Origin: Diplonema japonicum
Taxonomy: Eukaryota > Protista > Euglenozoa: Diplonemea
NCBI GenBank assembly: GCA_964019335.1
Contig: OZ025743.1
Span: 124,001-188,000 of the forward strand
DNA: 64,000 nt
Reading direction: 5' to 3'
The notes under the pieces are model-generated. The model was given only the letters and a program-made list of their open reading frames with translations, searched no databases and was not told the DNA's origin. Shown one piece after another: positions 7,261 to 39,677 of this stretch; within the stretch, counting starts at the first letter, position 1, and the number at the start of each line of letters is the position of its first letter. A program made the translations under genes and the position numbers.

Positions 7261-7337
7261 GACTGGCACCTTCCGAAGAAGGGCCTCCCACGTCCGCCGG
7301 GTTGAGCAGAGGATGCCCCGGGGCGGCCGTTCCAGTC
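7261..7337 (-). ncRNA. Structured RNA motif B (pseudoknotted three-way junction), divergent copy
   Basis: GACUGG...CCAGUC outer stem, a long P2 capped by GGCA-UCCUC-UGCU, a junction GGGAGG complementary to the loop, and a CCUUC-UUCG-GAAGG hairpin. It covaries with the copy at 24489-24562. Confidence 0.7.
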
Positions 7338-7393
7338 TGATCATGTCGCACTATAATATATGCTCTCATCTCCAAGGAGAAAAGAGGTTTTTT

Positions 7394-17556: not shown

Positions 17557-18435
17557 TTAAGCATATCCAAAAGAGAATATTTTCAGCTTCAGTGCTTATT
17601 TCGTCTTCGCTTGTACAATGGGGAGGGGGAAAAGAATAGAAAGAAATAAAAAATTGGTTCTCTTTTTTCTTTTTTTTTTTTTTCAATTTTTTTTTTATTT
17701 TTTTTTTTTTTTCCCATTATCCTATTTTTCTTACAATAAAAGAAAAAAAAAGCACCCCTTTTGTTCCCTTTTTTTATTTCCCCGCTTACTTTGTTTCGCC
17801 CCGAGAGGGGAAAAAAGAAAACAGTACGGGGGAGGAAAAAGAAAGGAAAGCAAAGAAGGACTCTGGATGGAAAGTAAAATAGAATCAGAAAGATATTTAG
17901 AAGAAAAAAAAAAAGCACACATAGACTGAATCGGTTCGAGTGGGAATCTTCATTTCTTGTCTTTTATTTTCTTTATTGTATTTCTGCTTCACAAAAAAAA
18001 AATAAGATTTTCTTTTTTTTTTTTGTGAAACAAAAAAGATTTTTTTTTGTTCTTCGTTCTCCAGATTTGAAACAAATCCCATTTCAAAAGAGAAAAAAGA
18101 GGGGGGGGGGGGAATTCACTATGATAGGAGATTAGTGGTTAGCAACGGCCCACCGCGGTGGCGTCCCTACCAAAAAAATGCAACAGGAGAGAGCGCATGT
18201 GGGAAAGAACAATAATTCAAAATAAAACATAAAATAGATGAGTTAAAAAAAAGGTTGAAAGGATATCTTTGTGCGCGACCCTCTCTTGTTCTCATCCACC
18301 AAAAAAAAAAAAAAAAAAGGATCTTTTGCTTTGATAAGAAACAATCACTGCTATAGAATTCAAAGGTTCAATTTACATTATCATATTGCTGTCACACTCT
18401 TTTTTTTTGTTTTGTATCTTTTCTTTTTGTAGCCC

Positions 18436-20793: not shown

Positions 20794-20916
20794 TATATTT
20801 ATGTTTTTTTTTCTCTTTCTTTTTGTAAAAATACTAGAATCTGTGTTTTTTCCCCCCATTTTTTTTTTTTTTTGTGGCGAAGCGAGAATAAAAAAAAATA
20901 AAAAGGTCATCGGAGG

Positions 20917-21093
20917 AAACTGAAATGATATTGCAAGTGGGAATAAAATGTGAAAAAGTAAAAAAACAGGTGAAGAAGGAATAATACTGCATACGAAACA
21001 GAGACTTGAATTATAAAGTGATTGACATCCTCAAGAGGAGCCTCCCACGTACCAGGAATTAATCAGAGGTTGCTTCCATGGCCCGTATCAGTC
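20917..21093 (-). mobile_element. Short solo PLE-terminus insertion consisting of RNA motif B plus the 3' tail
   Basis: Similar to the pLTR 3' end (tgaaatg..., atactgcatacgaaa, motif B at 21020-21093). gtcatcggagg is repeated at 20906-20916 and 21091-21101. Confidence 0.65.
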
Positions 21094-21404
21094 ATCGGAG
21101 GTAAATTTCTCCAAATGTGTATAACTTACACAAGCTGGTGAAAGGGACATGCAAGAGACAACATGTGGGTTATCATCTTCGTTGTGTCCTTCCAACACAG
21201 GGCAGGGTCGCCGCCTAAGAGGAAAGGGGGTCTTGTGAGGAATCCTCGACCACAGACGAGAGGGCACCGTTGGAGGATCGCGAAAGGGAGCTGCAGAGCT
21301 CTGTAACGCCGAGGCTAGAACAAAATGGCGGCCCGTCTGCAGAAACAAGAGGAGATGGGAGAACAAACAGATGTGACAAAACCACACTAGCTCTTCACTG
21401 CCTT

Positions 21405-23972
21405 TCATCGCGGTTCTTCGTACTTCCTTTTCACGCCCCTCCTTTCGGGAGAAGTCTCCTTGCGCCTTGACAGAAGAAGTCCCCGAATGGACTCAACGTT
21501 GCCCCCCTCAGCCGCGTAGAACAGTGGGGTGAGTCCCTCCCCGTCCCTCACACATGGGTCTTGCTCGTAGGACTCCAGCAGCAGCTGCATCGCCTCAGTA
21601 CATTTTGCAGCAGCAATGTGCAAAGGAGTAAGCCCCCGATTGTCCTTCACACAAGGGTCTTGCTTGTACTCATCGACGAGGACCTTCACCATCTCCAAGC
21701 CTCCCCTTGCTGCATAGTGCAAGGGTGTCTCGCCATTGTTGTTCCTCATGCTAGAGTCCACTCTGCATTCATCTAGGAGGTACCTCATCACTTCTATGCA
21801 CCCCTCACTTGCTGCATCGTGGATGGCGGTGTTTCCAATGTCTGACACGGTGCAAGGGTCAACTTTGCACTCTTCGACAATGAACTTCACCACATCAACT
21901 TTGTTCTTCATTGCCGCCCTGTGCAGAGGTGTGATGCCCATCCCATCCTTCATCCCAGGGTCAACCTTGCAAATTTCAGTAAGATACCTTACCACCTGTA
22001 GCTCTCCACTCTGTGCTGCTACGTCCATGGGTGTGAAGCCGCCTGTGGTCCTTGAGCCAGGGTTTTGCTTGTGAACTTCAACAAGGTGCTTCACTGCCTC
22101 CAGCTGACCATCTCTCGCTGCAAACATAATCGGCGTGAATACCTTGTCCTCGACTGTCAGCTCCTGCTTGTAAACATTGATGAGACAGTCCATTGCCGCA
22201 ATCTTGCCTGCTTGTGCAGCGAGGTGGAGAGGTGTGGTGCCATTTTTGTTCCTTGCCCCAGGGTCCACCTTGTACTCGTCGATGAGGAGCCTCATGGCCT
22301 CCACGTGACCACCCAGTGCCGCCCTGTGAATGTGAGCATAGCCCTCATCATCCTCACCGCTCGGGTCTTGCTTGCAAACTTCGACAAAATACCTCATCAC
22401 ATCAACTTGGTTGTTCATTGCTGCCCTGCGCAGGGGTGTGGTGCCTCTCCCATCCTTCATCCCAGGGTCAACCTTGCAGACTTCAGTGAGATACTTGACC
22501 ACCTGCAGCTGTCCCTTCTCTGCTGCAACGTCCATTGGTGTGAAGCCGCCTGTGGTCCTTGAGCCAGGGTTTTGCTTGTGAACTTCAACAAGGTGCCTCA
22601 CTGCCTCCAGCTGACCATATTGTGCAGCACACATAATCGGCGTGAATACCTTGTCCTCGACTGTCAGCTCCTGCTTGTAAACATTGATGAGACAGTCCAT
22701 TGCCGCAAGCTTGCCTGCTTGTGCAGCGAAGTGTAGAGGTGTGGTGCCGTCCTTGTCCCTTGCCCCAGGGTCCACCTTGTACTCGTCGATGAGGAGCCTC
22801 ATGGCCTCCACGTGACCATTACTTGCTGCCATATGAAGGAAGGAGGTTCCGTTTCCATCCACAAGGCTGGGGTCAAGCTTGCACTCTTCGATGAAATACC
22901 TCATCACATCAACATTGTTCGCTACCGCCAAGAACAAGCCTCTTCTGTTCTTCATCCCACCAAGGTCAACCTTGCAGACTTCAGTAAGATACTTGACCAC
23001 ATGCAAGTGATTGCAACACACAGCAAGGTCTAGAGGTGCCATGCCACTATTGTTTAGCAAACTGGGATCCAACTTAAACTTACTCACGAGCCACTCCAGT
23101 GATTGAAGCCTTCCCGCTTCCGCTGCGTGGTGGACGAGAGTTGCACCGCAGGGTTCCACAAACGCAGGGTCTTGCTTGCACTCCTCAATGAGATACTTCA
23201 TAGCCTCGAACTGGCCTCTTGTGAGAAGGACCGCAACAAGGCCATCAGCAGTCGGGGTCGCAGGGTCTATCTTGCACACCTCAATGAGGTACCTCAAGGC
23301 CTCCACGTGACCTCTCACTGCCGCCCTGTGAATGTGAGCATAGCCCTCATCATCCTCACCGCTCGGGTCTTGCTTGCAAACTTCGACAAAATACCTCATC
23401 ACATCAACTTGGTTCTTCATTGCCGCCCTGCGCAGGGGTGTGGTGCCTGTCCCATCCTTCATCCCAGGGTCAACCTTGCAGACTTCAGTGAGATACTTGA
23501 CCACCTGCAGCTGTCCACTCTGTGCTGCTACGTCAATGGGTGTGAAGCCGCCTGTGGTCCTTGAGCCAGGGTTTTGCTTGTGAACTTCAACAAGGTGCCT
23601 CACTGCCTCCAGCTGACCATCTTGTGCAGCACACATAATCGGCGTGAATTCCCTGTCCTCGACCGTCAGCTCCTGCTTGTAAACATTGATGAGACAGTCC
23701 ATTGCCGCAAGCTTGCCTTTTTGTGCAGCGAGGTGGAGAGGTGTGATGCCCCTCTTGTCCCTTGCCCCAGGGTCCAGTTTGAACTCGTCGATGAGGAACC
23801 TCATGGCAGCGAGCTGACCGTGCCATGCTGCAGTGTGCAAAGCTGTCTCACCACTCGGACCAGTCACACTTCTGTGAACTCCGTACTTCTGAATGACTGC
23901 CTTCATGTGTTGGAGGTTGCCTGTCGCAGCAGCGGACGCCACCTCGCCAAACACTTTATAGTCTTCATCCAT
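21405..23972 (-). CDS. Ankyrin-repeat protein (~855 aa), paralog 1
   Basis: Continuous ankyrin repeats (G.TPLH.AA..G.L..M..LI) with a 169-aa higher-order unit and a basic C-terminal tail. The likely start is MDEDYKVF at 23972. Confidence 0.88.
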   Translation of the reverse strand: MDEDYKVFGEVASAAATGNLQHMKAVIQKYGVHRSVTGPSGETALHTAAWHGQLAAMRFLIDEFKLDPGARDKRGITPLHLAAQKGKLAAMDCLINVYKQELTVEDREFTPIMCAAQDGQLEAVRHLVEVHKQNPGSRTTGGFTPIDVAAQSGQLQVVKYLTEVCKVDPGMKDGTGTTPLRRAAMKNQVDVMRYFVEVCKQDPSGEDDEGYAHIHRAAVRGHVEALRYLIEVCKIDPATPTADGLVAVLLTRGQFEAMKYLIEECKQDPAFVEPCGATLVHHAAEAGRLQSLEWLVSKFKLDPSLLNNSGMAPLDLAVCCNHLHVVKYLTEVCKVDLGGMKNRRGLFLAVANNVDVMRYFIEECKLDPSLVDGNGTSFLHMAASNGHVEAMRLLIDEYKVDPGARDKDGTTPLHFAAQAGKLAAMDCLINVYKQELTVEDKVFTPIMCAAQYGQLEAVRHLVEVHKQNPGSRTTGGFTPMDVAAEKGQLQVVKYLTEVCKVDPGMKDGRGTTPLRRAAMNNQVDVMRYFVEVCKQDPSGEDDEGYAHIHRAALGGHVEAMRLLIDEYKVDPGARNKNGTTPLHLAAQAGKIAAMDCLINVYKQELTVEDKVFTPIMFAARDGQLEAVKHLVEVHKQNPGSRTTGGFTPMDVAAQSGELQVVRYLTEICKVDPGMKDGMGITPLHRAAMKNKVDVVKFIVEECKVDPCTVSDIGNTAIHDAASEGCIEVMRYLLDECRVDSSMRNNNGETPLHYAARGGLEMVKVLVDEYKQDPCVKDNRGLTPLHIAAAKCTEAMQLLLESYEQDPCVRDGEGLTPLFYAAEGGNVESIRGLLLSRRKETSPERRGVKRKYEEPR

Positions 23973-24379
23973 GTTGCCAATAAAGCACAGAATTGTTAAA
24001 AAAAAAGGGGGGGGGGCTTTTGGGTTGGGTTTGTAATGGATAATCAAGTCTGACAAAAAAAAAGAATATTTTAAAGGCCCCCCCGAATAATTCCATCCCA
24101 AAATAATAATGTGGTTTCCCCAAATACCGTAAAGCGAAAAAATCCCAGGAGAAAAATGCCGGAAGGGAAAAAAAGCCGGATATTTTTTTTCTCCAGCCGG
24201 CATTTTTCGGCTTGGGGGAAGGGGTGGGGGGGGACCCTGGAGTATTTCGCCAATCTTCCTTGGGACCTTTCTTGGGACAAAGCTCGCCTCCCATCTGAAC
24301 AACAGTGCCCACGTGCTGTCCCATGGAACCTTACAGCTTCCAGGACATAACTGATGAACCCATCCAAAAAGGTAGGTGC

Positions 24380-24787
24380 TGAAATGGTTTTAAGTTAGGA
24401 TGAAGAAGCGAAGAAATAGATAAAAAGGGGTGGGAAAGAATAAATACTGCATACGAAAACAGAGAGTCGAGTAAAAAAGGGAAAAGGTGACTGACATCCT
24501 CAAGAGGAGCCTCCCACGTACCAGGAATTAAGCAGAGGTTGCTTCCATGGCCCGTATCAGTCTATCGCCAGAAAGAATAATGAAAATAACATAACAAAGA
24601 GAAGGGGAGAAGAAACGGAAAAAGACGGCTTGGTCATCAGAGAATGTTGACCCAAATGCGTCGGCGGACGCAGTTTAACGTCATACCCGGGACGGAAACC
24701 ATGTTGGGAAAGCAGAAGGGAAGTTAAAAGTCAAGAAGTGGAAAAGGAAAAGGTGGAAACTAAAATCATAGGGTGCGAGGTCTGTGA
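24380..24787 (-). repeat. 3' pseudo-LTR of the PLE
   Basis: Near-identical 408-bp direct repeat of 32233-32640. Confidence 0.92.
24489..24562 (-). ncRNA. Structured RNA motif B in the pLTR (other copies at 32342-32415, 21020-21093, 33768-33841 and 7261-7337)
   Basis: GACUGAU-ACGGGCCAUGGA-AGCA-ACCUC-UGCU-UAA-UUCCUGGUACGU-GGGAGGC-UCCU-CUUG-AGGA-U-GUCAGUC. G-U pairs and a UUCG loop in the homolog indicate the minus (sense) strand. Confidence 0.7.
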
Positions 24788-24805
24788 GACCCTGCATAGC
24801 CTATC

Positions 24806-24850
24806 GCCCTCGTAGCACGCCGGGCCGGCACTCCTACATTGCGTAGGGTC
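24806..24850 (-). ncRNA. Structured RNA motif A immediately 3' of the PLE stop codon
   Basis: GACCCUAC-GCAAU-GUAGGAGUGCCGGCCCGGCGUGCUACGAGGGC, conserved with 7394-7437 while the flanks are not. Confidence 0.65.
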
Positions 24851-24864
24851 GTCTCCAGTAGTTC

Positions 24865-26097
24865 CTAGTTGTAGGAGTTCAGCACAGTCGACCACTGTGA
24901 CTCGCTGTAGTAGAGGGTCCCTGCCCCCACGAAGTCAGCGAGTAGGGCTGCCACAGTCGGATACGACTTGTCCTTGAACCCTTGGGTCTGCAACCGAAAG
25001 CCCTGTTCCTGGCGGGAAGCGTAGAGCCACGTCGAGTCATAACAGACCAGCAGACACGGGATCGCGACGCGTGTGTCGAGGGGGACCGTGACCATGGGGG
25101 TCTCACCCAGGAAGTGTGTGCAAGCCCTGGACATGCAGCTGAGGTCAAAGACGGCCTCGCCCTGGGAAAGGAAGCCCAGGTGTCGAAGCTCATCCAGGTC
25201 CTCAGGGCCGTCGACGTCTGCTTCCCTGGTGAGCCTCTTAAGGGCGACAAGTCCAGTGACTCTGGTGTTCGGCCTCGTCGCGGCGAGATCCCGTTTGGCC
25301 GCGGGAAGGGCGGGGCCGTCTTCGGGTTCCGGGCGTTTGTTCCTCTGCCCGTTGTAGGTGAGCAGGAGAGGGGTCCTCCCTGGAGTCCTAGTCTCGTCAC
25401 CTCTTGGGGCCTCGGAACCGAAGAGTGGGTGTTTCCAGCCGCCTTGGGCGAAGAACTCCGACCACCACTGTTGCTGTACCGCGGTGTTCAGCCCCGAGTG
25501 CCATTCGTGAGACAACCGAAGACGTTCGGTGGTAGGCAACGCCTTGTGCGCAATCAGAAGAAGCTGTTCCTGGTTGGCGACGGTTGCCTGTTGGTCGGCA
25601 GTTCTATCCGTGTCACGGGCCTCGAGCAGCAGTTGATGTGGAGAGGTGTCCAGGTGCATCGGGAGGGGACCGACCGACAGGAGCTGACGCTGGTGTTCGT
25701 CCAAGAGCTCCGGGTGTCGCCGGAAGTAGACCAAGAGACTGAGGTATCGATCCATCCGTCTCTGGAGGGCCCTTCGGTTGAGGGCTTCCTGATCAAAACC
25801 CTGTGACTGCTCGCGCAGGATGAGAAGATCCCCATCGCCTGTGGAGGAACTCTTACCACGACGGCTTTCGTGCTCGTAAGCAGTACCGTCGTGCTTCTTC
25901 TTGCGCGAGGGTCTGTCCGGGGAGTCCTGCGTGAGGTCGATCATTTCTAAACCACCATCCGCCTGGTGAGGGTCTAGGGGAGCGTCTGCCTCGGCTCGGG
26001 CCACGGGCGGCTCCAGGGTCAGCGTCGTGTCTCTCTGGGCGTTGACCACCGGTTGAAGCGTCGCGTGTCCCATGGCGGGAGCCATCGGCGTATCCAT
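24865..26097 (-). CDS. PLE polyprotein C-terminal segment (frameshifted) ending in a degenerate Josephin-like repeat
   Basis: It continues the upstream repeat (MGHATLQPVV) in a shifted frame. MSRACTHFLG...PCLLVC..STWLYA resembles LSRACLMVVG...PCLIVG...GHWFIA upstream. Confidence 0.7.
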   Translation of the reverse strand: MDTPMAPAMGHATLQPVVNAQRDTTLTLEPPVARAEADAPLDPHQADGGLEMIDLTQDSPDRPSRKKKHDGTAYEHESRRGKSSSTGDGDLLILREQSQGFDQEALNRRALQRRMDRYLSLLVYFRRHPELLDEHQRQLLSVGPLPMHLDTSPHQLLLEARDTDRTADQQATVANQEQLLLIAHKALPTTERLRLSHEWHSGLNTAVQQQWWSEFFAQGGWKHPLFGSEAPRGDETRTPGRTPLLLTYNGQRNKRPEPEDGPALPAAKRDLAATRPNTRVTGLVALKRLTREADVDGPEDLDELRHLGFLSQGEAVFDLSCMSRACTHFLGETPMVTVPLDTRVAIPCLLVCYDSTWLYASRQEQGFRLQTQGFKDKSYPTVAALLADFVGAGTLYYSESQWSTVLNSYN

Positions 26098-26113
26098 CCC
26101 GAGTCCGATGTTC

Positions 26114-29100
26114 TCATGGACGGACTGGATGCAAGGAGTGAGCTGTACCTGGCGGGCGCCGAGGGGCGTCTGCCAGAACGGGCGTTGTCACGGCTCGGGC
26201 GAGCGATGACTCCACAGCCGACGTTGTCACAATCTGGGAGCCGACCACTGGTTGGAGTGTCGCGTGTCCCATGGTAGACGACGGCATCGGTGTGTCACTC
26301 CCGTGTCCGGTGTCCCGACGGGTGGACTGAGTGCAGGCCGCGAGCTGGGTGGATGACACGTCCGTTGGCGGTGGAAGGCATGGTGTCAACCGAGGCTCAG
26401 TAACCAGCCGCTTCGACAGGGTCGCGCGGGGCGTCGGAATTTCGACAGACTTCGTAAGTCTGAGTCCGGCGTCCATCGGGGGCAGTCTACTGCTGGGAGG
26501 ATCCGTCTGGAGCGTCGATGATATCGAGAACAGTACAGGTGCTGTGACACGGTCCGTCTGACAGGTTGCGACTGCTGTCTGTGGTGTAGACTTGTGCAGA
26601 CTCGAGACCTTCAGGAAGAGCGGGACAGTTCCGACCACGTTAGTCTGGCTTGCCGTAGACGTGGTGGTGACAGAGCATCCGGTGTGCACGGCTCGCGCGG
26701 CCACGGCGGCAGCTAGGGCTATGATGGCGGTGGCGACGGGCCGCCCGAAGTGAGCGGTGTGCGCATCCACACCTGATGCGGCGACTCCTGTGTCGAGCCG
26801 TCGGGTGCGTGCGGCATATGTAGCTATAGCTGCAGCTAGGGTGACATAAGTTAGGAGGGTGCGATCTTCCGGGGTGTTGAGAGCGGTCTCAGTCTTTCGC
26901 GCGCTCGAGTCGCTTACCTGGGGTGCCGCCGGGGTGATGACCGGCTCAAACTGGCGAAACTCAGCCTCAGGGTCTAGAACACGTGTGTTGTGTTTCCTGC
27001 CTGGGGTTGTCCTGGCCCACACATCGTCTGGGATGCAGAGGATGTTGTGTTCGGAGTATGTCGCGCAGATGTGTTTGAAGCTCTGGAGCCTTAGCCGTAC
27101 GTCGGTGTCTTTGACCATGTACCTTCCCTTCTTCCTGAGAGCGATGAACCAGTGGCCGCTGAGACTTCGTTTCAAGGGACCAACGATCAAGCAGGGGCTT
27201 TCTTTCATGCCCGCACGGAAGACCTCCAAGTTTGCACCAACGACCATGAGGCAAGCACGTGACAAGGTCGAGCGGGAAAAGTTGCCAAGAGGATCGGGCG
27301 CTTCATCAGTGCTGGAAGGGGAGATGAGTCGTGAGAAGCCGTGGTACATCTCCTGGATCTCCTGCATTGTAGAGAAGGGGATGCGGTCCACACCAGCATA
27401 GTCCCAGCCGCATTCCAGGCCCAGGCGACCTTCCCCGCTGTTGGTGTGCAGGTTGATGGGGGGCGAAAAAACCTGGTCCGTGACACCAGATGGTGAGACC
27501 ACGGAGGCTGCTCGGGGTTGTGACGGTTCGACAAGACCTGAAGAGCTGTCCGAGGAACTGTCCGAGGGCTCGTCTGAGGGGCCCCCCGAGAAGGCGACTG
27601 AGGAGACGACTGAGGAGTCAGCTGAGGAGTCGTCCGAGGAGTCGTCCGTGGGAAGCGCACGGGGTTTCTTGGGGCCTATGTACGTTTTTTCCGGCAACCA
27701 AGAATCTACCGGGGCTTTGGCGTCGTATCGGTGGAGGACTTGCGTGAAGAAGGCCAGCAGGTTGCTTTTCTCCATGGCGAAGCGTCGATCCACGCGTTCG
27801 ATAAGGAAGGCGTTGTACGCTTTCCGCAGGCCGCCCTTGTCGTGACCGCGATCTAGGAGCAGGTAGATCACTGAAGCGATCTCCCGTTTGAGGTCCGCGA
27901 TGTTGTTGGTCAGGGCGCAGGCACGGATGACCATGCCCTTGAAGATGCCTGGTCCCTGGGTGGTGGGCGCCGCGGTGTGCCCGTGGGTGAACCGCGTAGG
28001 CCGGAAGCGCCAGTTCTGCGCCTTATCGTTAATGCTAAGTCTAATATAGTTGTGCTTAGCTTGTTCGTGGCGCTCTATCCGGATGCGAATCCCGATAAAG
28101 GGGACGTCGCATGGGTCTGAAGAGGTCTTTACATAAGCCATGCCATAAAGCTCCTCCGGGGGTGGCGCAGTGCTCCACAACAGGAAGTCGTCGATGTAGC
28201 GACACGCGTTGCAGTAGCGTTTCAAGGTCTCCCAGTCCTCTTCGGCGAGGAGCTTGTCGATGTATGCGGCCTCCACGGCGTAGCAGAACAGGTTCGCCAG
28301 GTCGGGGGAGGCGTTCCCACCCATGGGGATACCCTTTACTTGACGAACGGCGCGGCCACCCTGCACAACATAGGTGTTGTCAACGACGAGGTCCAGGAGC
28401 TTATGGACTTGGATCCGTTCCGGGGTGTAGACATCGTCCTCGTCGGCATCTGTGAAGGAGCTCCCGTCCTTGCCACGGGTGAGGTTCTTGCCGGTGAAGT
28501 CGAACGCTTCTTGGACTGCTTTACGAACCCCCTCTTTCAGACGCTCTTGGTCGAGGTTGGTGTACATGTCCCGGAAGTCGTACGTGGCAGGGGACAGGCT
28601 TTTGTAAGCCGTGTACTGCTGCTTGATATCCGCAGCTACGTTCTCGGCCGAGTCGACGATCCAGTACCGCTTTAGTCGGATACCGTCGGGACCGTGGGTC
28701 TTGGACCTGCCCTCCAGATCCTTGTCCAGCAGCGCGCGTTGGACAGCCTTCAGGAGGGAAGACAGTTCTAGATGGAGGGCCGTGGTGGCAGCTGTGGGTT
28801 TCTTAGCTTTATTGCCCGTTGTATCGCCGCCTGCTGCGACCAAGTTCTCCATAATTTCCTGCGTGCTGACCGCTGCTGGTTGGTCCACAGGGGGTGCATC
28901 AGTGGAGGAGACACCAGAGATCCACCTGACGCCCACTTTGTCTTTGTGTAGCTTCAGGGTACCGTACAGGTATGGCATGCGACGTGTGGAATCGAGGTTG
29001 AAGGTCTTGGCTTGATCAGCTATTTCGGAGAAGATCGAGTCCAAGGGCTTCGAGACCGGCTCGAAAGCTTGGCTATCAAGCTGTTGGTGCAGGATCCTGA

Positions 29101-29299
29101 GGTAGTGATCCTTGCAACAGACGCCAATGTCGTGGGTGCTTTTGTCTATGGGGAGGAAAACGTAGACCTCCTGAAGTTTCCGGAGCTTTGTCTTGATGAA
29201 CTCCGGGACTGAGGGGTCGAAGACCGGAGACTGAGTGTGGGGGTGGAGAAGGTTCTGTGCCTTGGCGAGGAGGACCTTCCGGAAGGAATCCTTTTTCAC
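26114..29299 (-). CDS. PLE reverse transcriptase, thumb, Josephin-like protease and low-complexity linker
   Basis: RT motifs as above. At ~27030-27450: LECGWD...DPLGNFSRSTLSRAC...CLIV...GHWFIALRKKGRYMVKDT. Confidence 0.9.
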   Translation of the reverse strand: MKKDSFRKVLLAKAQNLLHPHTQSPVFDPSVPEFIKTKLRKLQEVYVFLPIDKSTHDIGVCCKDHYLRILHQQLDSQAFEPVSKPLDSIFSEIADQAKTFNLDSTRRMPYLYGTLKLHKDKVGVRWISGVSSTDAPPVDQPAAVSTQEIMENLVAAGGDTTGNKAKKPTAATTALHLELSSLLKAVQRALLDKDLEGRSKTHGPDGIRLKRYWIVDSAENVAADIKQQYTAYKSLSPATYDFRDMYTNLDQERLKEGVRKAVQEAFDFTGKNLTRGKDGSSFTDADEDDVYTPERIQVHKLLDLVVDNTYVVQGGRAVRQVKGIPMGGNASPDLANLFCYAVEAAYIDKLLAEEDWETLKRYCNACRYIDDFLLWSTAPPPEELYGMAYVKTSSDPCDVPFIGIRIRIERHEQAKHNYIRLSINDKAQNWRFRPTRFTHGHTAAPTTQGPGIFKGMVIRACALTNNIADLKREIASVIYLLLDRGHDKGGLRKAYNAFLIERVDRRFAMEKSNLLAFFTQVLHRYDAKAPVDSWLPEKTYIGPKKPRALPTDDSSDDSSADSSVVSSVAFSGGPSDEPSDSSSDSSSGLVEPSQPRAASVVSPSGVTDQVFSPPINLHTNSGEGRLGLECGWDYAGVDRIPFSTMQEIQEMYHGFSRLISPSSTDEAPDPLGNFSRSTLSRACLMVVGANLEVFRAGMKESPCLIVGPLKRSLSGHWFIALRKKGRYMVKDTDVRLRLQSFKHICATYSEHNILCIPDDVWARTTPGRKHNTRVLDPEAEFRQFEPVITPAAPQVSDSSARKTETALNTPEDRTLLTYVTLAAAIATYAARTRRLDTGVAASGVDAHTAHFGRPVATAIIALAAAVAARAVHTGCSVTTTSTASQTNVVGTVPLFLKVSSLHKSTPQTAVATCQTDRVTAPVLFSISSTLQTDPPSSRLPPMDAGLRLTKSVEIPTPRATLSKRLVTEPRLTPCLPPPTDVSSTQLAACTQSTRRDTGHGSDTPMPSSTMGHATLQPVVGSQIVTTSAVESSLARAVTTPVLADAPRRPPGTAHSLHPVRP

Positions 29300-30561
29300 T
29301 GCAGGGGATCTCCGAAAGTCTGAGTGATGAACCCGTTGATGTCCTCCTCGAGACTTTGGGAAGAGAGGAGGGCGTGTGTTGAGAGGCGGAACTTCATGCC
29401 TCTGTTCAGAACCTCCTTCACTTCGTCGTCATCGATGACCTCTGCTGCTAGTCCGCAGGCGTGTCCCTCATGTGTGTGTGAGGTCTTGCGCTTCGAGCAA
29501 GGGCAGTTTGTTGTAGGCTCGGCCGCTTCTGGACGCGGGGTCTCGATGCTGAGCTTCGTCACATTGCACACTGTGGCCTTGAGGGTTTGACCAAGCTTGT
29601 TGCACATGTGTACTCTGCGAAGGAGGGCTGGCTTGGGGCATGCCGCAATTACCTCCTTGTCCTCGAAGACCTTACGCCAGAGGATCATCTCCTTGGCCTT
29701 GTGGTCAAAACTCGTTTTGAACCACACGAAGCCTTCGTCTCGGCGGACCACCTTTTTCAAGAGGGCAGGGCTGAGGCGGTTGGTGAGGCCTCGTTCGATA
29801 GCCGCGATCTTGGCGGTGAAGAAGTTCCCGACGAAGTAACGTCTCAGGAAGTTCAGGTACCTGAAGACGGTCTTGGGGGCCCAGGTAGTGAAGTCGTAGT
29901 TCAGCACATCGGGGTGTGCACACATCGCGGTGATCTTCATACACAGGGACTTGTAGTTGGACCCAGTAGCCTGGATCGACAGCTCCCCGTCGTCGTTCAG
30001 CCGTATCGAGGGAGCAGTAGATCTGGTGGGGGTGTTGTTGGGGTTCGAAGGGGACGTAGTAGTGTTGCTGCTGGGGTCCTGTTTGGCATTCGAGCGCCCC
30101 TGGTGTTGGTGTCGCTGCTGTTGCTGCTCGCGTACCGTCTTAGGTTTACGTCTCGTGTTGCGGCGGCGACGGGTCTGCGTCTTAGCAAACCTACCACGCA
30201 TGTTAAGGGAGCAAGCCAGCCTATTGATGTACTGGTTCTCCCTGGGGATCGCAACACGACGGAAGGACTTGGCGTCGTCGAAGAACTTGGGGTTGATCGA
30301 TTCGACGGGGAAAGCGAATAACGGGCCCCCGTTTTCCCTGAGGGCCTTGTGAAAGCGGGTGTCGTTGCTTTCAGCGTTCTCTCTGTGCGATCTGGCGCTG
30401 CTCCAGTGGCCCTGCATACGACGACGTAAGGTGTTAAACGTCTGCCCTGCGTACACAGGTTCACCGTGTTTGTCGACAGCGAGGTAGATGATACCTGCTG
30501 CGTCCTGTTCGGGGGCCTTTCCTTGGCGCATGTTCTTTACGATGCGGCTGTACTTGGCCAT
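29296..30561 (-). CDS. PLE GIY-YIG endonuclease and linker, frameshifted from the RT at a C-run near 29303
   Basis: AGIIYLAVDKHGEPVYAGQTFNTLRRRMQGH...FPVE...RENQYI...LN. Confidence 0.88.
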   Translation of the reverse strand: MAKYSRIVKNMRQGKAPEQDAAGIIYLAVDKHGEPVYAGQTFNTLRRRMQGHWSSARSHRENAESNDTRFHKALRENGGPLFAFPVESINPKFFDDAKSFRRVAIPRENQYINRLACSLNMRGRFAKTQTRRRRNTRRKPKTVREQQQQRHQHQGRSNAKQDPSSNTTTSPSNPNNTPTRSTAPSIRLNDDGELSIQATGSNYKSLCMKITAMCAHPDVLNYDFTTWAPKTVFRYLNFLRRYFVGNFFTAKIAAIERGLTNRLSPALLKKVVRRDEGFVWFKTSFDHKAKEMILWRKVFEDKEVIAACPKPALLRRVHMCNKLGQTLKATVCNVTKLSIETPRPEAAEPTTNCPCSKRKTSHTHEGHACGLAAEVIDDDEVKEVLNRGMKFRLSTHALLSSQSLEEDINGFITQTFGDPLQ

Positions 30562-30643
30562 GAACTTGGCGGCTGCGTCCTGGCTGAGAGACTCCCAGAG
30601 GGCCCAGTCAATGCTGCCGTTGTTTCGTTTGCAGCTGACCGGG

Positions 30644-31279
30644 CTAGGCGGAGATGTCCCGCGACTTCTTGACTTGGTCCTTTGCCATTGTGCTAAGGAA
30701 GAAGTCCTTGCGGATCTCGTACCTGTTTTGATCTTTGCCCCAGCGGTTATCGTAGGCAGCTTGGTATCCGTGACGATAGGCGGGCTGGGGGCCAGACCGG
30801 TGGTTCGGCCGGTGGGCCGGTTGAGGAGTAGTAGGCGTTTTCCGTAAGGTCTTGACGGGACGCGTCGGTGCTACACCTTCGGTGAAACAGGCACGGACTC
30901 CATGGTGGTGTAGGAGTGCCTGCGTGAAGAGTGCATAGGGAATATGTGTGTCCCTGGTGGCGATCTCCAGGTGGACTTTTAGCACGTTGCCGTTTTGTAC
31001 GACATCACGTACGAAGAGGGCCTTTCGGACACCCGCACCATAGGCGTCACAGATGGTGCGGATGACTTCCTCTCTGGAGGGCGACCTGTTGATTGCACGG
31101 TAGTTGAAGGGGTGGGAGTTATATATGCGCGACTGACTATACTTCTTATAAGTGTTTGTTTTATTCGTTGTTGACGGAAAGGTATTGATCTTTAGGGGTG
31201 CATTTCCTGCGGCACGCCGCACCTGTGATGCGCGCGTGTCATAACGAGTTGGAAAGCGGCCGTAGGCGGGTCTCTTCAT
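30644..31279 (-). CDS. Basic N-terminal segment of the PLE ORF (211 aa; probably joined to the GIY-YIG frame by a frameshift)
   Basis: ATG-initiated ORF inside the element. The GIY-YIG frame is open upstream across its stop codon. Confidence 0.55.
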   Translation of the reverse strand: MKRPAYGRFPTRYDTRASQVRRAAGNAPLKINTFPSTTNKTNTYKKYSQSRIYNSHPFNYRAINRSPSREEVIRTICDAYGAGVRKALFVRDVVQNGNVLKVHLEIATRDTHIPYALFTQALLHHHGVRACFTEGVAPTRPVKTLRKTPTTPQPAHRPNHRSGPQPAYRHGYQAAYDNRWGKDQNRYEIRKDFFLSTMAKDQVKKSRDISA

Positions 31280-32232
31280 CGCTATGAAAATGCTTGATGC
31301 TTTAGAAAAACGGAGGGTTTCTACAAAGGTGGATTGGTTACCTGACTCCTAGCAGCAGTTTTATTTAGGACAGCTTTTAGAATGACAGTCACAAGTTGGT
31401 CAAAGCACTAGACGGGTTAGAGGACCGGGGACAAGGAGGTCTAGACATGTCATAATGAGCTGATGGTGGGTATGAACTGCACCCGTTGCCGTAACGGGGT
31501 CCGACCGGAGTATTTCAACATGAGCCGAGTTGCCTACTGAGGGCTTTTTTTCCACCACTTTCCTGAGCGTGCAGGATGGTCCTGTGAGAGGGACGTAGCC
31601 TGTGCGGGCAGCAAAGCTAACGAAGGGTTCTCCTTGTCTAGGTAAGAACGGGGGGGAAAAGGAATAGTTGGGTGCATAGAATGGATATAGGGCACTATAT
31701 GTATGTGCAAATATACGTTCAGTCATATAGCGCGGCTCACCTCATCAAAAAAACGTGCATGCCTTGCCTGTATGTTCACCCGTGCAGTCAGGACTATCAC
31801 TGCACGGTCGAGAGCTCCCCAGGGCCAGTTTACGAAACCTATCATCGCCCAACTAACGCCGTGTCTCGCATGGACCCCCTCTTTGACGTACAAGGGGCTG
31901 AGCGGATTTCTCAGGATGTTGGATGTAGAGGTGGGGAGTCTCTAGTTGTGCGGTCAAAAGGCATTTTATCAAAAACGGGCTTTTTTCGGAAGAAAGCCCT
32001 CGAAAACTTCGGCTTTCAACGACGAACGGGAGGAGATCAGTTTCGTATTTGGGTCTACATAAATGCGACCCTGCAGAGTGACCTACGGTGAAGTAAGTCC
32101 CCATTGTTGGTCGCTGGGGTTGGTACAGCAAAGCTGTGAGAAGTCTTAAAAACTAATCTTAAGAGTTAAAAACCTGCAGAGCCTCTGGTTGCGTCTAAAC
32201 GGCGCCCACAAGGTAGTGCAGTTAGAGGCAAC

Positions 32233-32640
32233 TGAAATGGTTTTAAGTTAGGATGAAGAAGCGAAGAAATAGATAAAAAGGGGTGGGAAAGAATAAATAC
32301 TGCATACGAAAACAGAGAGTCGAGTAAAAAAAGGAAAAGGTGACTGACATCCTCAAGAGGAGCCTCCCACGTACCAGGAATTAAGCAGAGGTTGCTTCCA
32401 TGGCCCGTATCAGTCTATCGCCAGAAAGAATAATGAAAATAACATAACAAAGAGAAGGGGAGAAGAAACGGAAAAAGACGGCTTGGTCATCAGAGAATGT
32501 TGACCCAAATGCGTCGGCGGACGCAGTTTAACGTCATACCCGGGACGGAAACCATGTTGGGAAAGCAGAAGGGAAGTTAAAAGACAAGAAGTGGAAAAGG
32601 AAAAGGTGGAAACTAAAATCATAGGGTGCGAGGTCTGTGA
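32233..32640 (-). repeat. 5' pseudo-LTR of the PLE (partial tandem)
   Basis: Direct repeat of 24380-24787, abutting the TSD. Confidence 0.92.
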
Positions 32641-33073
32641 TCATCCAAAAAGGTAGGTGCCTTTCACTCACCGTTTTTTTATTTCTTCATTTTTTTTTTT
32701 TTTTTTAATTCCACCAGACCAGACCGACCCCACCCAGCTGGGCTGTGTGGAGCCAACGGAAGTGTGTTAAGACGTTCGTGCTTACGTGTCGGCCTGAGTT
32801 ATTGTTCTAGCACCTTTTATGACATGGGTATTCTCTTTCCACAGTTAGCTAATGGGTTTTTTTTTTTTTTTTTTTTGTTCCCCTCCTTTGGTTGCCAGTC
32901 CTCAGGATTTTTCTTTTTTTTTTTTTTTATATTGGCAGGCCGACCTAGTGCGACGTCCTTGGATGACACAGAGATAAATTCTGATCATCTAGCAGCCAGC
33001 CAGCCAACATCGCGGGTCCTCCGGCGTCTCACACGCGAACGCCACAGGATGACTACCGTAAGGACCACTCGAG

Positions 33074-33725
33074 GTGTCATATCAAGATGTTTTTCAGTCA
33101 TCCACCCTTATGAATAAGATTTCCTATTCAACATTCCGAAGGAGGAGAGGGAAGGAATTTATGCAGTGTGCCAAACCCACGGATATGTGCGAGTACTGTA
33201 CAAAAGCACAACGGATGCGTCTTTCGCTAACGATGCCATCGCGTGGGGTCAAATGGGACCTGCAGTTCAGTGTTTCGGACATGCAAGAGACCCTAAATTG
33301 TATTGATGCGATTCGATGGAAGTACCCAAAGAAAAAGGTACGTGAACTTGTTGCAAACTTGAAGCCTTGGGAGCAACATGTTGAAAGGTTGTACAATGAG
33401 CACAGGACTTCTCCCCACCGAATGCATTAGTTCTTGACATCGACTTCAAGTCCAAGGGGTCCCTACCAATGGGTCCTGTATCAAACAAGCTACGATTTTT
33501 ACCATTCGCAATCGTTCGGTGTTTTGGGAATCGGGGTGTACTGGATTGACGGGCATGGTGTCCGTAGGCGCTGCATGTTGATTGTGTGCTTTCAAGTCTG
33601 AATACTGACGTGAAATGCGTTATCGAGTGCCTGAAAACTGTCCTGGCTAGTGGGTTTGCGATCCCCCAAAAAAATGGAGTGGATTCTCTGGACTGACAGT
33701 GGGCGTCACTTTCGTGCAAAGGAAT
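33074..33725 (+). pseudogene. DNA-transposase remnant (Sola-like DDD, tentative)
   Basis: Across frameshifts: ISYSTFRR...KPTDMCEYC; ALVLDIDFKSKGSLP; WILWTDSGRHFR. Confidence 0.45.
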
Positions 33726-33760
33726 TTTGCTATTTTCTTCTTTTTCGTCTTCGTGACGTC

Positions 33761-36700
33761 TATAAGTGACTGACATCCTCAAGAGGAGCCTCCCACGTAC
33801 CAGGAATTAATCAGAGGTTGCTTCCATGGCCCGTATCAGTCATCGGAGGTAAATTTCTCCAAATGTGTATAACTTACACAAGCTGGTGAAAGGGACATGC
33901 AAGAGACAACATGTGGGTTATCATCTTCGTTGTGTCCTTCCAACACAGGGCAGGGTCGCCGCCTAAGAGGAAAGGGGGTCTTGTGAGGAATCCTCGACCA
34001 CAGACGAGAGGGCACCGCTGGAGGATTGCGAAAGGGAGCTGCAGAGCTCTGTAACGCCGAGGCTAGAACATGGCGGCCCGTCTGTAGAAACAAGAGGAGG
34101 TGGCTGAAACGATTGTAGAATAAAAGTGGGAGAACAAACAGAAGAGAAAATACCACACTAGCTCTTCACTGCCTTTCATCGCGGTTCTTCGTACTTCCTT
34201 TTCACGCCCCTCCTTTCGGGAGAAGTCTCCTTGCGCCTTGACAGAAGAAGTCCCCGAATGGACTCAACGTTGCCCCCCTCAGCCGCGTAGAACAGTGGGG
34301 TGAGTCCCTCCCCGTCCCTCACACATGGGTCTTGCTCGTAGGACTCCAGCAGCAGCTGCATCGCCTCAGTACATTTTGCAGCAGCAATGTGCAAAGGAGT
34401 AAGCCCCCGATTGTCCTTCACACAAGGGTCTTGCTTGTACTCATCGACGAGGACCTTCACCATCTCCAAGCCTCCCCTTGCTGCATAGTGCAAGGGTGTC
34501 TCGCCATTGTTGTTCCTCATGCTAGAGTCCACTCTGCATTCATCTAGGAGGTACCTCATCACTTCTATGCACCCCTCACTTGCTGCATCGTGGATGGCGG
34601 TGTTTCCAATGTCTGACACGGTGCAAGGGTCAACTTTGCACTCTTCGACAATGAACTTCACCACATCAACTTTGTTCTTCATTGCCGCCCTGTGCAGGGG
34701 TGTGGTGCCTCTCCCATCCTTCATCGCAGGGTCAACCTTGCAGACTTCAGTGAGATACCCTACCACCTGCAGCTGTCCCTTCTCTGCTGCAACGTCCATG
34801 GGTGTGAAGCCAGCTGTGGTCCTTGAGCCAGGGTTTTGCTTGTGAACTTCAACAAGGTGCTTCACTGCCTCCAGCTGACCATCTCTCGCTGCAAACATAA
34901 TCGGCGTGAATACCTTGTCCTCGACTGTCAGCTCCTGCTTGTAAACATTGATGAGACAGTCCATTGCCGCAAGCTTGCCTGCTTGTGCAGCGAAGTGTAG
35001 AGGTGTGGTGCCGTCCTTGTCCCTTGCCCCAGGGTCCACCTTGTACTCGTCGATGAGGAGCCTCATGGCCTCCACGTGACCATTAATTGCTGCCACATGA
35101 AGGAAGGAGGTTCCGTTTCCATCCACAAGGCTGGGGTCAAGCTTGCACTCTTCGATGAAATACCTCATCACATCAACATGGTTCGTCGCTACCGCCAAGA
35201 ACAAGCCTCTTCTGTTCTTCATCCCACCAAGGTCAACCTTGCAGACTTCAGTAAGATACTTGACCACATGCAAGTGATTGCAACACACAGCAAGGTCTAG
35301 AGGTGCCATGCCACTATTGTTTAGCAAACTGGGATCCAACTTAAACTTACTCACGAGCCACTCCAGTGATTGAAGCCTTCCCGCTTCCGCTGCGTGGTGG
35401 ACGAGAGTTGCACCGCAGGGTTCCACAAACGCAGGGTCTTGCTTGCACTCCTCAATGAGATACTTCATAGCCTCGAACTGGCCTCTTGTGAGAAGGACCG
35501 CAACAAGGCCATCAGCAGTCGGGGTCGCAGGGTCTATCTTGCACACCTCAATGAGGTACCTCAAGGCCTCCACGTGACCTCTCACTGCCGCCCTGTGAAT
35601 GTGAGCATAGCCCTCATCATCCTCACCGCTCGGGTCTTGCTTGCAAACTTCGACAAAATACCTCATCACATCAACTTGGTTCTTCATTGCCGCCCTGCGC
35701 AGGGGTGTGGTGCCTGTCCCATCCTTCATCCCAGGGTCAACCTTGCAGACTTCAGTGAGATACTTGACCACCTGCAGCTGTCCCTTCTCTGCTGCAACGT
35801 CCATTGGTGTGAAGCCGCCTGTGGTCCTTGAGCCAGGGTTTTGCTTGTGAACTTCAACAAGGTGCCTCACTGCCTCCAGCTGACCATCTTGTGCAGCACA
35901 CATAATCGGCGTGAATTCCCTGTCCTCGACCGTCAGCTCCTGCTTGTAAACATTGATGAGACAGTCCATTGCCGCAAGCTTGCCATTCTCCGCAGCGAGG
36001 TGGAGAGGTGTGGTGCCGTCCTTGTCCCTTGCCCCAGGGTCTACTTTGTACTCGTCGATGAGGAGCCTCATGGCCTCCACGTGACCACCCAGTGCCGCCC
36101 TGTGAATGTGAGCATAGCCCTCATCATCCTCACCGCTCGGGTCTTGCTTGCAAACTTCGACAAAATACCTCATCACATCAACTTGGTTCTTCATTGCCGC
36201 CCTGCGCAGGGGTGTGGTGCCTCTCCCATCCTTCATCCCAGGGTCAACCTTGCAGACTTCAGTGAGATACTTGACCACCTGCAGCTGTCCCTTCTCTGCT
36301 GCAACGTCCATTGGTGTGAAGCCGCCTGTGGTCCTTGAGCCAGGGTTTTGCTTGTGAACTTCAACAAGGTGCCTCACTGCCTCCAGCTGACCATCTTGTG
36401 CAGCACACATAATCGGCGTGAATTCCCTGTCCTCGACCGTCAGCTCCTGCTTGTAAACATTGATGAGACAGTCCATTGCCGCAAGCTTGCCATTCTCCGC
36501 AGCGAAGTGGAGAGGTGTGGTGCCGTCCTTGTCCCTTGCCCCAGGGTCTACCTTGTACTCGTCGATGAGGAGCCTCATGGCAGCGAGCTGACCGTGCCAT
36601 GCTGCAGTGTGCAAAGCTGTCTCACCACTCGGACCAGACACACTTCTGTGAACCCCGTACTTCTGAATGACTGCCTTCATGTGTTGGAGGTTGCCTGTCG

Positions 36701-37055: not shown

Positions 37056-37064
37056 GATCCGCTT

Positions 37065-37240
37065 TCACCAATTCTGTCCAGAAACCCTCGTATCTTCCAC
37101 AACACATCACCGTTTGACCCTTTTGTGTGAGTGAAGTGGAGGCTACTTTTAATTTCCTGGTAGCGTTTCCTGGGCATCGTGTTACTGAAAAGGGAGATTT
37201 TCATGGGTCCTGCACGCCGTAAACCCATCGCAACGCTCAA
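37065..37240 (-). pseudogene. piggyBac transposase fragment (truncated copy)
   Basis: MPRKRYQEIKSSLHF...LWKIRGFLDRI. Confidence 0.7.
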
Positions 37241-39468: not shown

Positions 39469-39504
<36 letters not shown>

Positions 39505-39677
39505 ACCAATCTATGGAGAGCAATTAAAAAAAAAAAAAATGTCTTTGAAGGGAACCTGCAGTATGTGACAGGATCGCCTAAAAAAGAAAGAGAGAGAGAG
39601 AGGTAAAAATAATACAAACCAATCACTTTGTCTTCTTTTTTGTTTATTTTCTCTTTTTTCTCTTCTTTTTGTAGCCC

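What the first reader, a model, noticed from the sequence alone, without database searches (positions are those of the whole stretch)
24489..24562. Conserved pseudoknotted three-way-junction RNA (motif B) in the 3' ends of two divergent Penelope-like families
Seen: the pLTR motif and the one at 7261-7337 have unalignable flanks but the same fold, with compensatory changes. The outer stem is GACUGA/UCAGUC versus GACUGG/CCAGUC. P2 is ACG-(G.A)-GCCA-GGA/UCC-UGGU-CGU versus ACG-(G.A)-CCGCC-GGG/CCC-GGCGG-CGU. Both have a YAA bulge and a cap RGCA-WCCUC-UGCU whose invariant loop CCUC is complementary to the invariant junction GAGG. The final hairpin has swapped sequence (UCCU-cuug-AGGA versus CCUUC-uucg-GAAGG). 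Known: PLE pLTRs typically carry hammerheads, and PLE RTs are the sister group of telomerase RT, whose RNA uses a pseudoknot and a three-way junction. Inference: this is a cis-acting RNA that I cannot assign to a known family. It could be an RT-recognition element, an exonuclease block or a new self-cleaving ribozyme.
Basis: partly seen in the sequence, partly recalled or inferred. Interest (0 to 1): 0.9.

Follow-up and report, generated by a model that had tools for sequence, protein, structure and literature searches.

The report
Conserved structured RNA in Penelope-like retrotransposons
A 75-letter RNA fold with fixed loops and freely co-varying stems sits near the 3' end of two distantly related Penelope-like jumping genes in a protist genome, matches no known RNA family, and occupies the place where other such elements carry a hammerhead ribozyme; its function is still untested.

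Summary
The motif is real. It is read on the minus strand, which is the sense strand of the elements. The window holds five copies and the 62.5-Mb genome holds at least 150-195.

There are only two sequence classes. Class A lies in the 3' UTR and pseudo-LTRs of the full Penelope-like element (PLE) at 24361-32660. Class B lies in the 3' UTR of a second PLE lineage with only 41-57% protein identity.

The two classes share an identical 11-nt junction (ACGUGGGAGGC) and an identical apical block (GCA-N-CCUC-UGC-UYAA). Ten of the 25 base pairs change on both sides and stay paired. Among diverged class-A copies the motif differs by 2.3%, against 18-20% in its flanks.

Rfam 15 gives no match, even at E<=10, and these elements carry no hammerhead. 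The CCUC/GAGG pseudoknot is only a complementarity: both sides are invariant, and it is sterically strained in cis.

Function is not settled. My estimates are:
- RNA handle for the element's reverse transcriptase complex, 90-110 nt upstream of the element's 3' end: about 0.4.
- New self-cleaving ribozyme replacing the hammerhead: about 0.25.

No read-end data were available, and no copies were found outside this organism group. Other first-stage notes flagged the same motif on other pieces of this genome; none had been followed up.

The parts
24489..24562 (-). Motif B, class A, in the 3' pseudo-LTR of PLE-A. In RNA 5'->3' order: P1 24557-24562 with 24489-24494; P2 arm 24516-24555; P3 hairpin 24497-24508.
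   Evidence: (63.4 bits)
24509..24519 (-). Invariant junction block ACGUGGGAGGC (the A of the G.A pair, the P2a 3' strand, and J2/3)
   Evidence: identical in classes A, A2 and B
24528..24542 (-). Invariant apical block GCA-N-CCUC-UGC-UYAA (3-bp cap, 5-nt loop, 4-nt bulge)
32342..32415 (-). Motif B, class A, in the 5' pseudo-LTR of the same element
21020..21093 (-). Motif B, subclass A2 (2 changes from A). It lies within a 5'-truncated PLE insertion (20913-21093) with a 14-bp target-site duplication, downstream of an ankyrin gene.
33768..33841 (-). Motif B, subclass A2, the duplicate copy after the second ankyrin gene. An ~830-bp dispersed repeat starts 5 nt downstream of it.
7261..7337 (-). 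Motif B, class B
   Evidence: 110.6 bits
7171..7784 (-). 5'-truncated PLE-B copy (end of the last ORF, motif A, motif B, 90-nt tail) inserted in a LINE
24361..32660 (-). Full PLE-A: ORFs with GIY-YIG (29296-30561), RT (26114-29299) and a C-terminal ORF (24865-26097). Its ends carry the 19-bp target-site duplication GCACCTACCTTTTTGGATG at 32642-32660 and 24361-24379.
24379..24787 (-). 3' pseudo-LTR (409 nt, 99.5% identical to 32232-32640). Motif B is at offset 225-298, and the element's 3' end lies 110 nt after the motif.
32232..32640 (-). 5' pseudo-LTR
24806..24850 (-). Motif A, a second 3'-UTR module shared with PLE-B (21-nt core at 7394-7414; the hairpin 5' of it runs to about 7434)

Best explanation
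Motif B is a selectively maintained ~75-nt three-way-junction RNA. It is encoded on the sense strand of the 3' UTR, and therefore of the pseudo-LTRs, of two divergent PLE lineages that have an N-terminal endonuclease (the Chlamys/Naiad type) and lack hammerheads.

My preferred mechanism is that it serves as the RNA handle by which the element's RT-endonuclease protein recognises its own transcript. The protein would dock there and start reverse transcription at a fixed site downstream. The element's 3' boundary lies 110 nt (PLE-A) or 90 nt (PLE-B) after the motif. On this reading the invariant loop and junction are the contact surface, and the stems act as spacers of fixed length (14 pairs plus a G.A in both classes).

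Shown here: existence, strand, copy number, the fold, covariation, selective conservation, position, and absence from Rfam.
Inferred: protein binding and a role in target-primed reverse transcription.
For: - Two PLE lineages with 41-57% identity in the RT ORF and 29% in the last ORF keep the motif in otherwise unalignable 3' UTRs.
- Ten pairs change on both sides and stay paired. Arm length is the same in both classes.
- Divergence among older class-A copies is 2.3% in the motif, against 19.5% upstream and 17.9% downstream.
- Contigs of runs X1 and X3 carry the motif unchanged, and every difference in them lies outside it.
- Every 5'-truncated copy I fetched by way of the motif runs on towards the 3' boundary, mostly to +183-196, as expected for 3'-terminal cis elements copied by target-primed reverse transcription. 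This sample was chosen by the motif, so it cannot show copies that lack it.
- In the one PLE studied in vitro, RT starts internally at a stem-loop about 90 nt 3' of the hammerhead cut site, the RNA requirement maps to that neighbourhood, and hammerhead cleavage is dispensable (PMC11167929).
- PLEs with an N-terminal endonuclease lack hammerheads yet proliferate (PMC8557442).
Against: - No binding or retrotransposition data exist.
- Elements usually co-evolve with their RNA handles. Complete invariance of about 26 unpaired or core nucleotides across such diverged proteins fits a constraint intrinsic to the RNA (catalysis) or a conserved host factor at least as well.
- Only two independent sequence classes exist.
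- The motif is not at the RT start site itself.
- The predicted fold is not unusually stable (z -0.7 and -0.2). In class B it lies 3 kcal/mol above an alternative fold.
Confidence: 0.4

Rival explanations
1. It is a new class of small self-cleaving ribozyme that does, in PLEs with an N-terminal endonuclease, the job the hammerhead does in canonical PLEs: cutting unit-length RNA out of tandem or polycistronic transcripts.
For: - It occupies the hammerhead's niche: the pseudo-LTR / 3' UTR, about 90-110 nt upstream of the element's 3' end.
- These elements have no hammerhead or other known ribozyme. The clade as a whole lacks canonical hammerheads (PMC8557442).
- It shows the usual ribozyme signature: about 75 nt, invariant junction and loop, and stems that change freely but stay paired.
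- The junction strands are 1, 7 and 2 nt long. From memory, a type III hammerhead has 1, 7 and 3.
From memory, another retroelement of that group, L1Tc, uses an HDV-like ribozyme.
Against: - There is no evidence of cleavage. Only assembled contigs were available, and they cannot show RNA ends.
- 5' ends of truncated copies do not pile up at one motif position. They spread from -225 to -1, and some lie inside the motif.
- The proposed loop-junction contact is sterically strained.
- Most conserved RNA motifs proposed as ribozymes do not cleave when tested (general knowledge).
Confidence: 0.25
2. It binds a conserved host factor, or is a processing or stability signal. Examples are a block to 5'->3' exonuclease, which would leave a protected RNA starting at the motif, or a signal for 3'-end formation, export or localisation in an organism whose mRNAs are made by trans-splicing and coupled polyadenylation.
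For: - Invariance of unpaired nucleotides across diverged elements suits a slowly evolving host partner.
- The architecture, a three-way junction with a possible pseudoknot, resembles exonuclease-resistant RNAs in outline.
- Two truncated copies start within 1-3 nt of the motif's 5' edge.
- In PLE-A a conserved polypyrimidine-AG island follows the motif.
Against: - The start of two copies at the 5' edge is within chance (my estimate, about 0.5 expected). One of them is explained by GAC microhomology with the target site.
- The PLE-B tail has no polypyrimidine tract.
- No Rfam family of this kind matches.
Confidence: 0.17
3. The loop CCUC and junction GAGG pair between two RNA molecules, as a kissing dimer. 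This would bring two templates together for the template jumps that create the partial tandems and pseudo-LTRs of PLEs.
For: - Cis pairing is strained, but the complementarity is perfectly conserved.
- PLE-A shows the partial-tandem structure, with a 409-nt 5' copy of the 3' end joined directly to the body.
- The PLE protein is predicted to be dimeric (PMC11167929).
Against: - This is purely inferential.
- A 4-5-bp complementarity between a 5-nt loop and a 7-nt junction is not rare by chance.
- There is no covariation.
Confidence: 0.08
4. There is no RNA function: it is a conserved DNA-level signal (an endonuclease target or a promoter piece), or a chance fold within a repeat.
For: - Stability z-scores are unremarkable.
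- Only one G.U pair distinguishes the strands.
Against: - Compensatory changes in 10 pairs, with no loss of pairing, are not expected of a DNA-binding site.
- The conservation boundary coincides with the ends of the fold.
Confidence: 0.05

Closest known systems
Hammerhead ribozymes of canonical Penelope-like elements (Cervera & de la Pena 2014, PMC4209133; Frangieh et al. 2024, PMC11167929)
   Same: - A small three-way-junction RNA in the pseudo-LTR / 3' region of a PLE, roughly 90-110 nt upstream of where reverse transcription starts.
- An invariant core with variable stems.
- Junction strand lengths of 1-7-2, against 1-7-3 in the hammerhead.
   Different: - None of the hammerhead core (CUGANGA, GAA, the cleavage-site H) is present. 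The junction is GGGAGGC / UG.
- No Rfam hammerhead model matches, even at E<=10.
- Self-cleavage has not been shown.
HDV-like ribozymes of retrotransposons (R2, L1Tc)
   Same: A 3-bp stem capped by a (U/A)CCUC loop whose C's could pair with the GG that directly follows a long helix, then a hairpin, then the closing strand. This is like P3/L3, P1.1 and P4 of HDV (my comparison, from memory).
   Different: - The strand that should form P2 lies 5' of the P1-like helix instead of between P1 and P3, so the double pseudoknot cannot form.
- The alternative HDV-type P2 pairing exists only in class A (GGAA/UUCC downstream), not in class B.
- There is no unpaired catalytic C in the J4/2 position.
- No Rfam HDV, CPEB3 or drz model matches.
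3'-UTR recognition elements of non-LTR retrotransposons (R2 3' UTR; stem-loops of stringent-type LINEs and their SINEs) and the internal RT-initiation region of the Anolis PLE
   Same: - A structured RNA near the 3' end that is retained by all 5'-truncated copies.
- Helices conserved in shape rather than in sequence.
   Different: - Those elements are usually specific to one family. Here the unpaired nucleotides are identical across lineages with 41-57% protein identity.
- The motif lies 90-110 nt upstream of the 3' boundary, not at it.
Pistol ribozyme and exonuclease-resistant RNAs (loop-to-junction pseudoknot architectures)
   Same: A hairpin loop complementary to a single-stranded junction next to a second hairpin, all within a closing stem.
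   Different: - The strand order differs from pistol.
- The Rfam models do not match.
- The hairpin arm is 14 pairs long and the linker is only 2 nt.

Membership tests
Hammerhead ribozyme | Conserved core CUGANGA ... GAA ... cleavage-site H around a three-way junction | tested here: not met
   The junction strands read U/A, GGGAGGC and UG. No hammerhead model matches at E<=10 or at gathering score in the window, PLE-B or A2 loci.
Hammerhead ribozyme | Site-specific self-cleavage | not testable with these tools
   Only assembled contigs were available.
HDV-like ribozyme | Nested double pseudoknot in the order P1-P2-P3-L3-P3'-P1'-P1.1-P4-J4/2-P2' | tested here: not met
   By inspection, the P2-like 5' strand precedes the P1-like strand, and the alternative P2 pairing is absent in class B. 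No Rfam match.
Twister, twister-sister, pistol, hatchet, hairpin, hovlinc and other Rfam ribozymes | Match to the family covariance model | tested here: not met
   cmscan of 241-561-nt stretches around both classes at E<=10 returned only chance hits to unrelated families.
SECIS element | AUGA / GA quartet, an AAR motif on the 5' side or in the loop, and in-frame UGA codons in the ORF | tested here: not met
   No conserved AUGA. The UYAA bulge is on the 3' strand. The intact PLE-A ORFs have no internal stops.
Penelope-like element of the N-terminal-endonuclease (Chlamys/Naiad) type, as host of the motif | GIY-YIG domain upstream of the RT, pseudo-LTRs from partial tandems, no canonical hammerhead | tested here: met
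   GIY-YIG in ORF 29296-30561 and RVT_1 in 26114-29299. 409-nt pseudo-LTRs and a 19-bp target-site duplication. No hammerhead. Clade assignment by phylogeny was not done.
Structured functional RNA (general criterion) | Compensatory base changes, and conservation exceeding that of the flanks | tested here: met
   Ten of 25 pairs change on both sides, 94.4% of cells pair, and 0 of 500 shuffles reach the covariation score. Divergence is 2.3% in the motif against 18-20% in the flanks. Caveat: there are only two deep lineages.
Pseudoknotted RNA (loop CCUC with junction GAGG) | Covariation or a geometry that supports the tertiary helix | tested here: inconclusive
   Both sides are invariant. Duplex energy is -6.2 to -6.8 kcal/mol. 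A 2-nt linker across a 14-pair arm is strained (inference). The J1/2 nucleotide and the first loop nucleotide stay complementary (U/A in class A, A/U in class B), which is a weak hint.

The most novel reading that the evidence does not exclude
Motif B is a new class of self-cleaving ribozyme, possibly protein-assisted like the Anolis PLE hammerhead. On this reading it replaces the hammerhead in PLEs with an N-terminal endonuclease and processes element RNA out of the long polycistronic transcripts of a diplonemid.
Probability: 0.25. Interest if true: 0.9.

Novelty: new variant of a known kind. Interest (0 to 1): 0.62.

Why it matters
PLEs with an N-terminal endonuclease (Naiad/Chlamys) are very successful yet lack the hammerhead found in all other PLEs. 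What, if anything, replaces it is an open question (PMC8557442). This is a compact candidate, well supported by comparative evidence, that sits in the same position. If it cleaves, it would be a new ribozyme class. If it binds the RT, it would be the first defined RNA recognition element of a PLE, a group whose RT is the closest relative of telomerase. Both outcomes can be tested with a 75-nt transcript.

Tried and rejected
- Rfam: gathering thresholds on the whole window and on PLE-B and A2 loci, and E<=10 on three short stretches. Only chance hits.
- Hand-threading onto the HDV-like fold: rejected, because the strand order is wrong and class B lacks the P2 partner.
- Hammerhead core, SECIS, and superficial 5S and 7SL resemblances: rejected on sequence and on the absence of Rfam hits.
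- A third sequence class in the genome: all intermediate and weak hits to the model were degraded A or B copies.
- Copies elsewhere: a pattern scan of JGI metagenomes gave 1 hit with no fold. Scans of IMG/VR (18 hits) and of prokaryotic genomes (3 hits) gave nothing scoring above chance with the model.
- Protein relatives of the PLE: only 3 hits.
- Homology breakpoints as a proxy for RNA ends. Several comparisons break at the motif's edges. On inspection these are an ordinary 5' truncation with microhomology, an unrelated repeat inserted 5 nt downstream, internal deletions, and a sharp drop in conservation. They are not evidence of cleavage.
- I first read the class-B copy in the window as a 245-nt SINE-like unit inside a LINE. 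I corrected this to a ~600-nt 5'-truncated PLE-B copy.
- Read laying: only contigs were available, so it gave no RNA starts or ends.

Full report
**What is there.**
The finding's sequence reads as RNA on the minus strand: GACUGA-U-ACG-G-GCCA-U-GGAA-GCA-ACCUC-UGC-UUAA-UUCC-UGGU-A-CGU-GGGAGGC-UCCU-CUUG-AGGA-UG-UCAGUC (window 24562 down to 24489). The copy at 7337-7261 reads GACUGG-A-ACG-G-CCG-CC-CCGGG-GCA-UCCUC-UGC-UCAA-CCCGG-CGG-A-CGU-GGGAGGC-CCUUC-UUCG-GAAGG-UG-CCAGUC.

Shuffles give a mean of 1.14 and never more than 3. Four of the copies are near-identical: class A at 24489 and 32342, and subclass A2 at 21020 and 33768. The fifth is class B.

**Copy number and classes.**
- A loose pattern finds 195 matches in the 62.5-Mb genome, against 2 for the reversed control.
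- A covariance model built only on class B (R1) finds class A full-length at 63 bits and 143 places in the genome.
- A model built on both classes (R2) fills its 150-candidate limit with hits of 80 bits or more.
- Every intermediate or weak hit I fetched was a degraded A or B copy.
- So the genome has two deep sequence classes only.

**The hosts.**
Class A lies in a full Penelope-like element on the minus strand, 32660 down to 24361.
- Its ORFs carry GIY-YIG (29296-30561), then RT (26114-29299), then a C-terminal ORF (24865-26097).
- It has 409-nt pseudo-LTRs (24379-24787 and 32232-32640, 99.5% identical).
- Its ends carry a 19-bp target-site duplication.
- The motif starts 303 nt after the stop codon and ends 110 nt before the element's 3' end.

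Class B belongs to a second PLE lineage.
- Protein matches of 41-57% identity to the PLE-A RT ORF lie 2.4-3.9 kb upstream of class-B motifs on six contigs.
- In two fetched copies the motif starts 83-84 nt after the stop of the last ORF. The C-terminus of that ORF is 29% identical to the PLE-A last ORF (E 3e-9).
- The class-B copy in the window is a ~600-nt 5'-truncated PLE-B (7784 down to about 7171) inserted in a LINE. Its coding remnant is 99% identical to the end of the PLE-B ORF.
- Most other class-B copies ride in a 1.55-kb non-coding repeat that captured a 245-nt PLE-B 3' fragment.
- The A2 copies are one 5'-truncated insertion with a 14-bp target-site duplication, later duplicated together with an ankyrin gene.

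**Is the fold real?**
- On an alignment of 16 distinct copies fitted to the model, 94.4% of cells form standard pairs, against 33-40% when the partners are slid by 1-3 columns.
- Ten of 25 pairs change on both sides. No shuffle of 500 reaches the covariation score.
- The changes are concentrated in P2b (7 pairs), P3 (2) and the inner pair of P1 (1).
- The P2 arm has 14 pairs plus a G.A in both classes, although the bulge shifts by one pair.
- The unpaired junction ACGUGGGAGGC, the cap GCA/UGC, the loop CCUC and the UYAA bulge are identical in both classes.
- The one G.U pair (class A) favours the minus strand.
- Caveats: almost all covariation comes from a single A/B split, and some within-class "compensation" is CpG decay hitting both strands of a CG-rich stem.
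- Thermodynamics alone is unremarkable (z -0.7 and -0.2). The shared fold lies about 3 kcal/mol above the minimum-energy fold in both classes.

**Selection.**
- Among class-A copies less than 97.5% identical to the reference, the motif differs at 48 of 2062 positions (2.3%). The flanks differ at 829 of 4242 positions upstream (19.5%) and 507 of 2825 downstream (17.9%).
- The A2 motif differs from class A at 2 of 74 positions, while its tail is only about 67% identical (36 differences in 110; the wider blast alignments give 80-83%).
- Contigs from runs filed under other organism labels gave the following:
  - X1 and X3 carry the motif with no change, and all of their listed differences fall outside it.
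  - The X1 and X3 alignments end exactly at the motif's 3' edge.
  - X4 shows 8 changes in the 18 nt just downstream of the motif and none listed inside it; 3 of its differences are unlisted.
- The same profile shows further conserved islands: motif A, and a polypyrimidine-AG stretch at 24435-24465.

**The pseudoknot.**
CCUC(U) and (G)GAGG can form 4-5 pairs (-6.2 to -6.8 kcal/mol). Both sides never vary, so there is no test.

Geometrically (my inference), the quasi-continuous helix CCUCUGC / GCA+GAGG would need the base of a 14-pair arm to sit within two nucleotides of the arm's own tip. That needs sharp bends at the bulges, or pairing between two molecules.

The only hint for proximity is that the J1/2 nucleotide and the first loop nucleotide stay complementary (U and A in class A, A and U in class B).

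**Known families.**
- Rfam 15 has no match at gathering score in the window or in the PLE-B and A2 loci. At E<=10 on short stretches there were only chance hits.
- The hammerhead core is absent.
- The HDV-like fold fails on strand order.
- SECIS features are absent.
- Pattern scans of metagenomes, viral contigs and prokaryotic genomes gave nothing that folds.
- The literature states that Naiad/Chlamys PLEs lack canonical hammerheads, with the consequence unknown (PMC8557442).
- In the Anolis PLE, RT starts internally at a stem-loop about 90 nt 3' of the hammerhead cut site, cleavage is dispensable in vitro, and the hammerhead cleaves only with protein present (PMC11167929).
- I found no paper on PLEs of diplonemids.

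**Mechanism.**
I could not test function. Homology breakpoints that seemed to coincide with the motif's edges have mundane explanations. 5' truncation points are spread out, and some lie inside the motif.

My estimates:
- About 0.4 for an RNA handle of the element's RT-endonuclease complex that positions initiation 90-110 nt downstream.
- About 0.25 for a new self-cleaving ribozyme. The invariant unpaired core across very diverged proteins, and the hammerhead-like position, speak for it. The lack of any cleavage evidence and the low base rate speak against it.
- The remainder for host-factor or stability signals, RNA dimerisation, or no RNA function.
- The first two are not exclusive, as the protein-assisted Anolis hammerhead shows.

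**Limits.**
- The sequencing runs were available only as contigs.

Noticed in passing
window 24806-24850 and 7394-7434 (minus strand): A second 3'-UTR module (motif A: a GNRA-capped hairpin CUUAC-GCAA-GUAAG / CCUAC-GCAA-U-GUAGG, followed by GGCCCGGCG-N-GCUACGAGGGC) is shared by PLE-A and PLE-B almost at sequence level. It has one compensatory change in the hairpin. The 245-nt PLE-B fragments begin at its first nucleotide.
   Followed up: partly
window 7171-12007 (minus strand): A LINE with an OTU protease (9632-10135), an APE endonuclease (8352-9314) and an RT (5890-7251) is interrupted between endonuclease and RT by the 5'-truncated PLE-B copy.
   Followed up: partly
L011 790-2340 and about 15 other loci: A 1.55-kb non-coding dispersed repeat flanked by T- and G-runs carries a 245-nt PLE-B 3' fragment. 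The fragment is bounded by a direct repeat (GTATTGTGAGGCTG), and the repeat was amplified together with it. It accounts for most class-B motif copies.
   Followed up: partly
window 20913-21093 and 21012-24376 / 33761-37055: Two ankyrin-repeat genes (965 and 956 aa) are duplicates that share a 5'-truncated PLE insertion just downstream (target-site duplication TTWCCTCCGATGAC). The full PLE-A inserted between the two gene copies.
   Followed up: partly
window 32829-33763 (approximate): An ~830-bp dispersed repeat (at least 8 copies at 92-94%) begins 5 nt after the A2 motif. It is followed by a ~250-bp repeat with dozens of copies.
   Followed up: no
window 24435-24465 (minus strand): A conserved polypyrimidine stretch ending in AG (CUCUCUGUUUUCGUAUGCAG) lies in the PLE-A tail and is also kept in A2. 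It looks like a trans-splice acceptor or polyadenylation determinant.
   Followed up: no
L004, L006, L015, L017, L019, L020, L022, L028: Older class-B copies show CpG to TpG/CpA decay throughout, including inside the stems. This mimics compensatory change and suggests cytosine methylation of repeats.
   Followed up: no
window 37059-46051 and 46528-55527: A 9-kb tandem duplication at 99.9% identity contains long ORFs on both strands (1084 and 992 aa). The same family occurs at 18400-20800 and 56720-58200.
   Followed up: no
G000:C66:427570-452094 and G000:C91:377590-391120: Motif copies are spaced regularly, at about 8.1 kb (4 copies) and at 6732/6725 bp (3 copies). These may be tandem arrays of PLE-derived units.
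   Followed up: no
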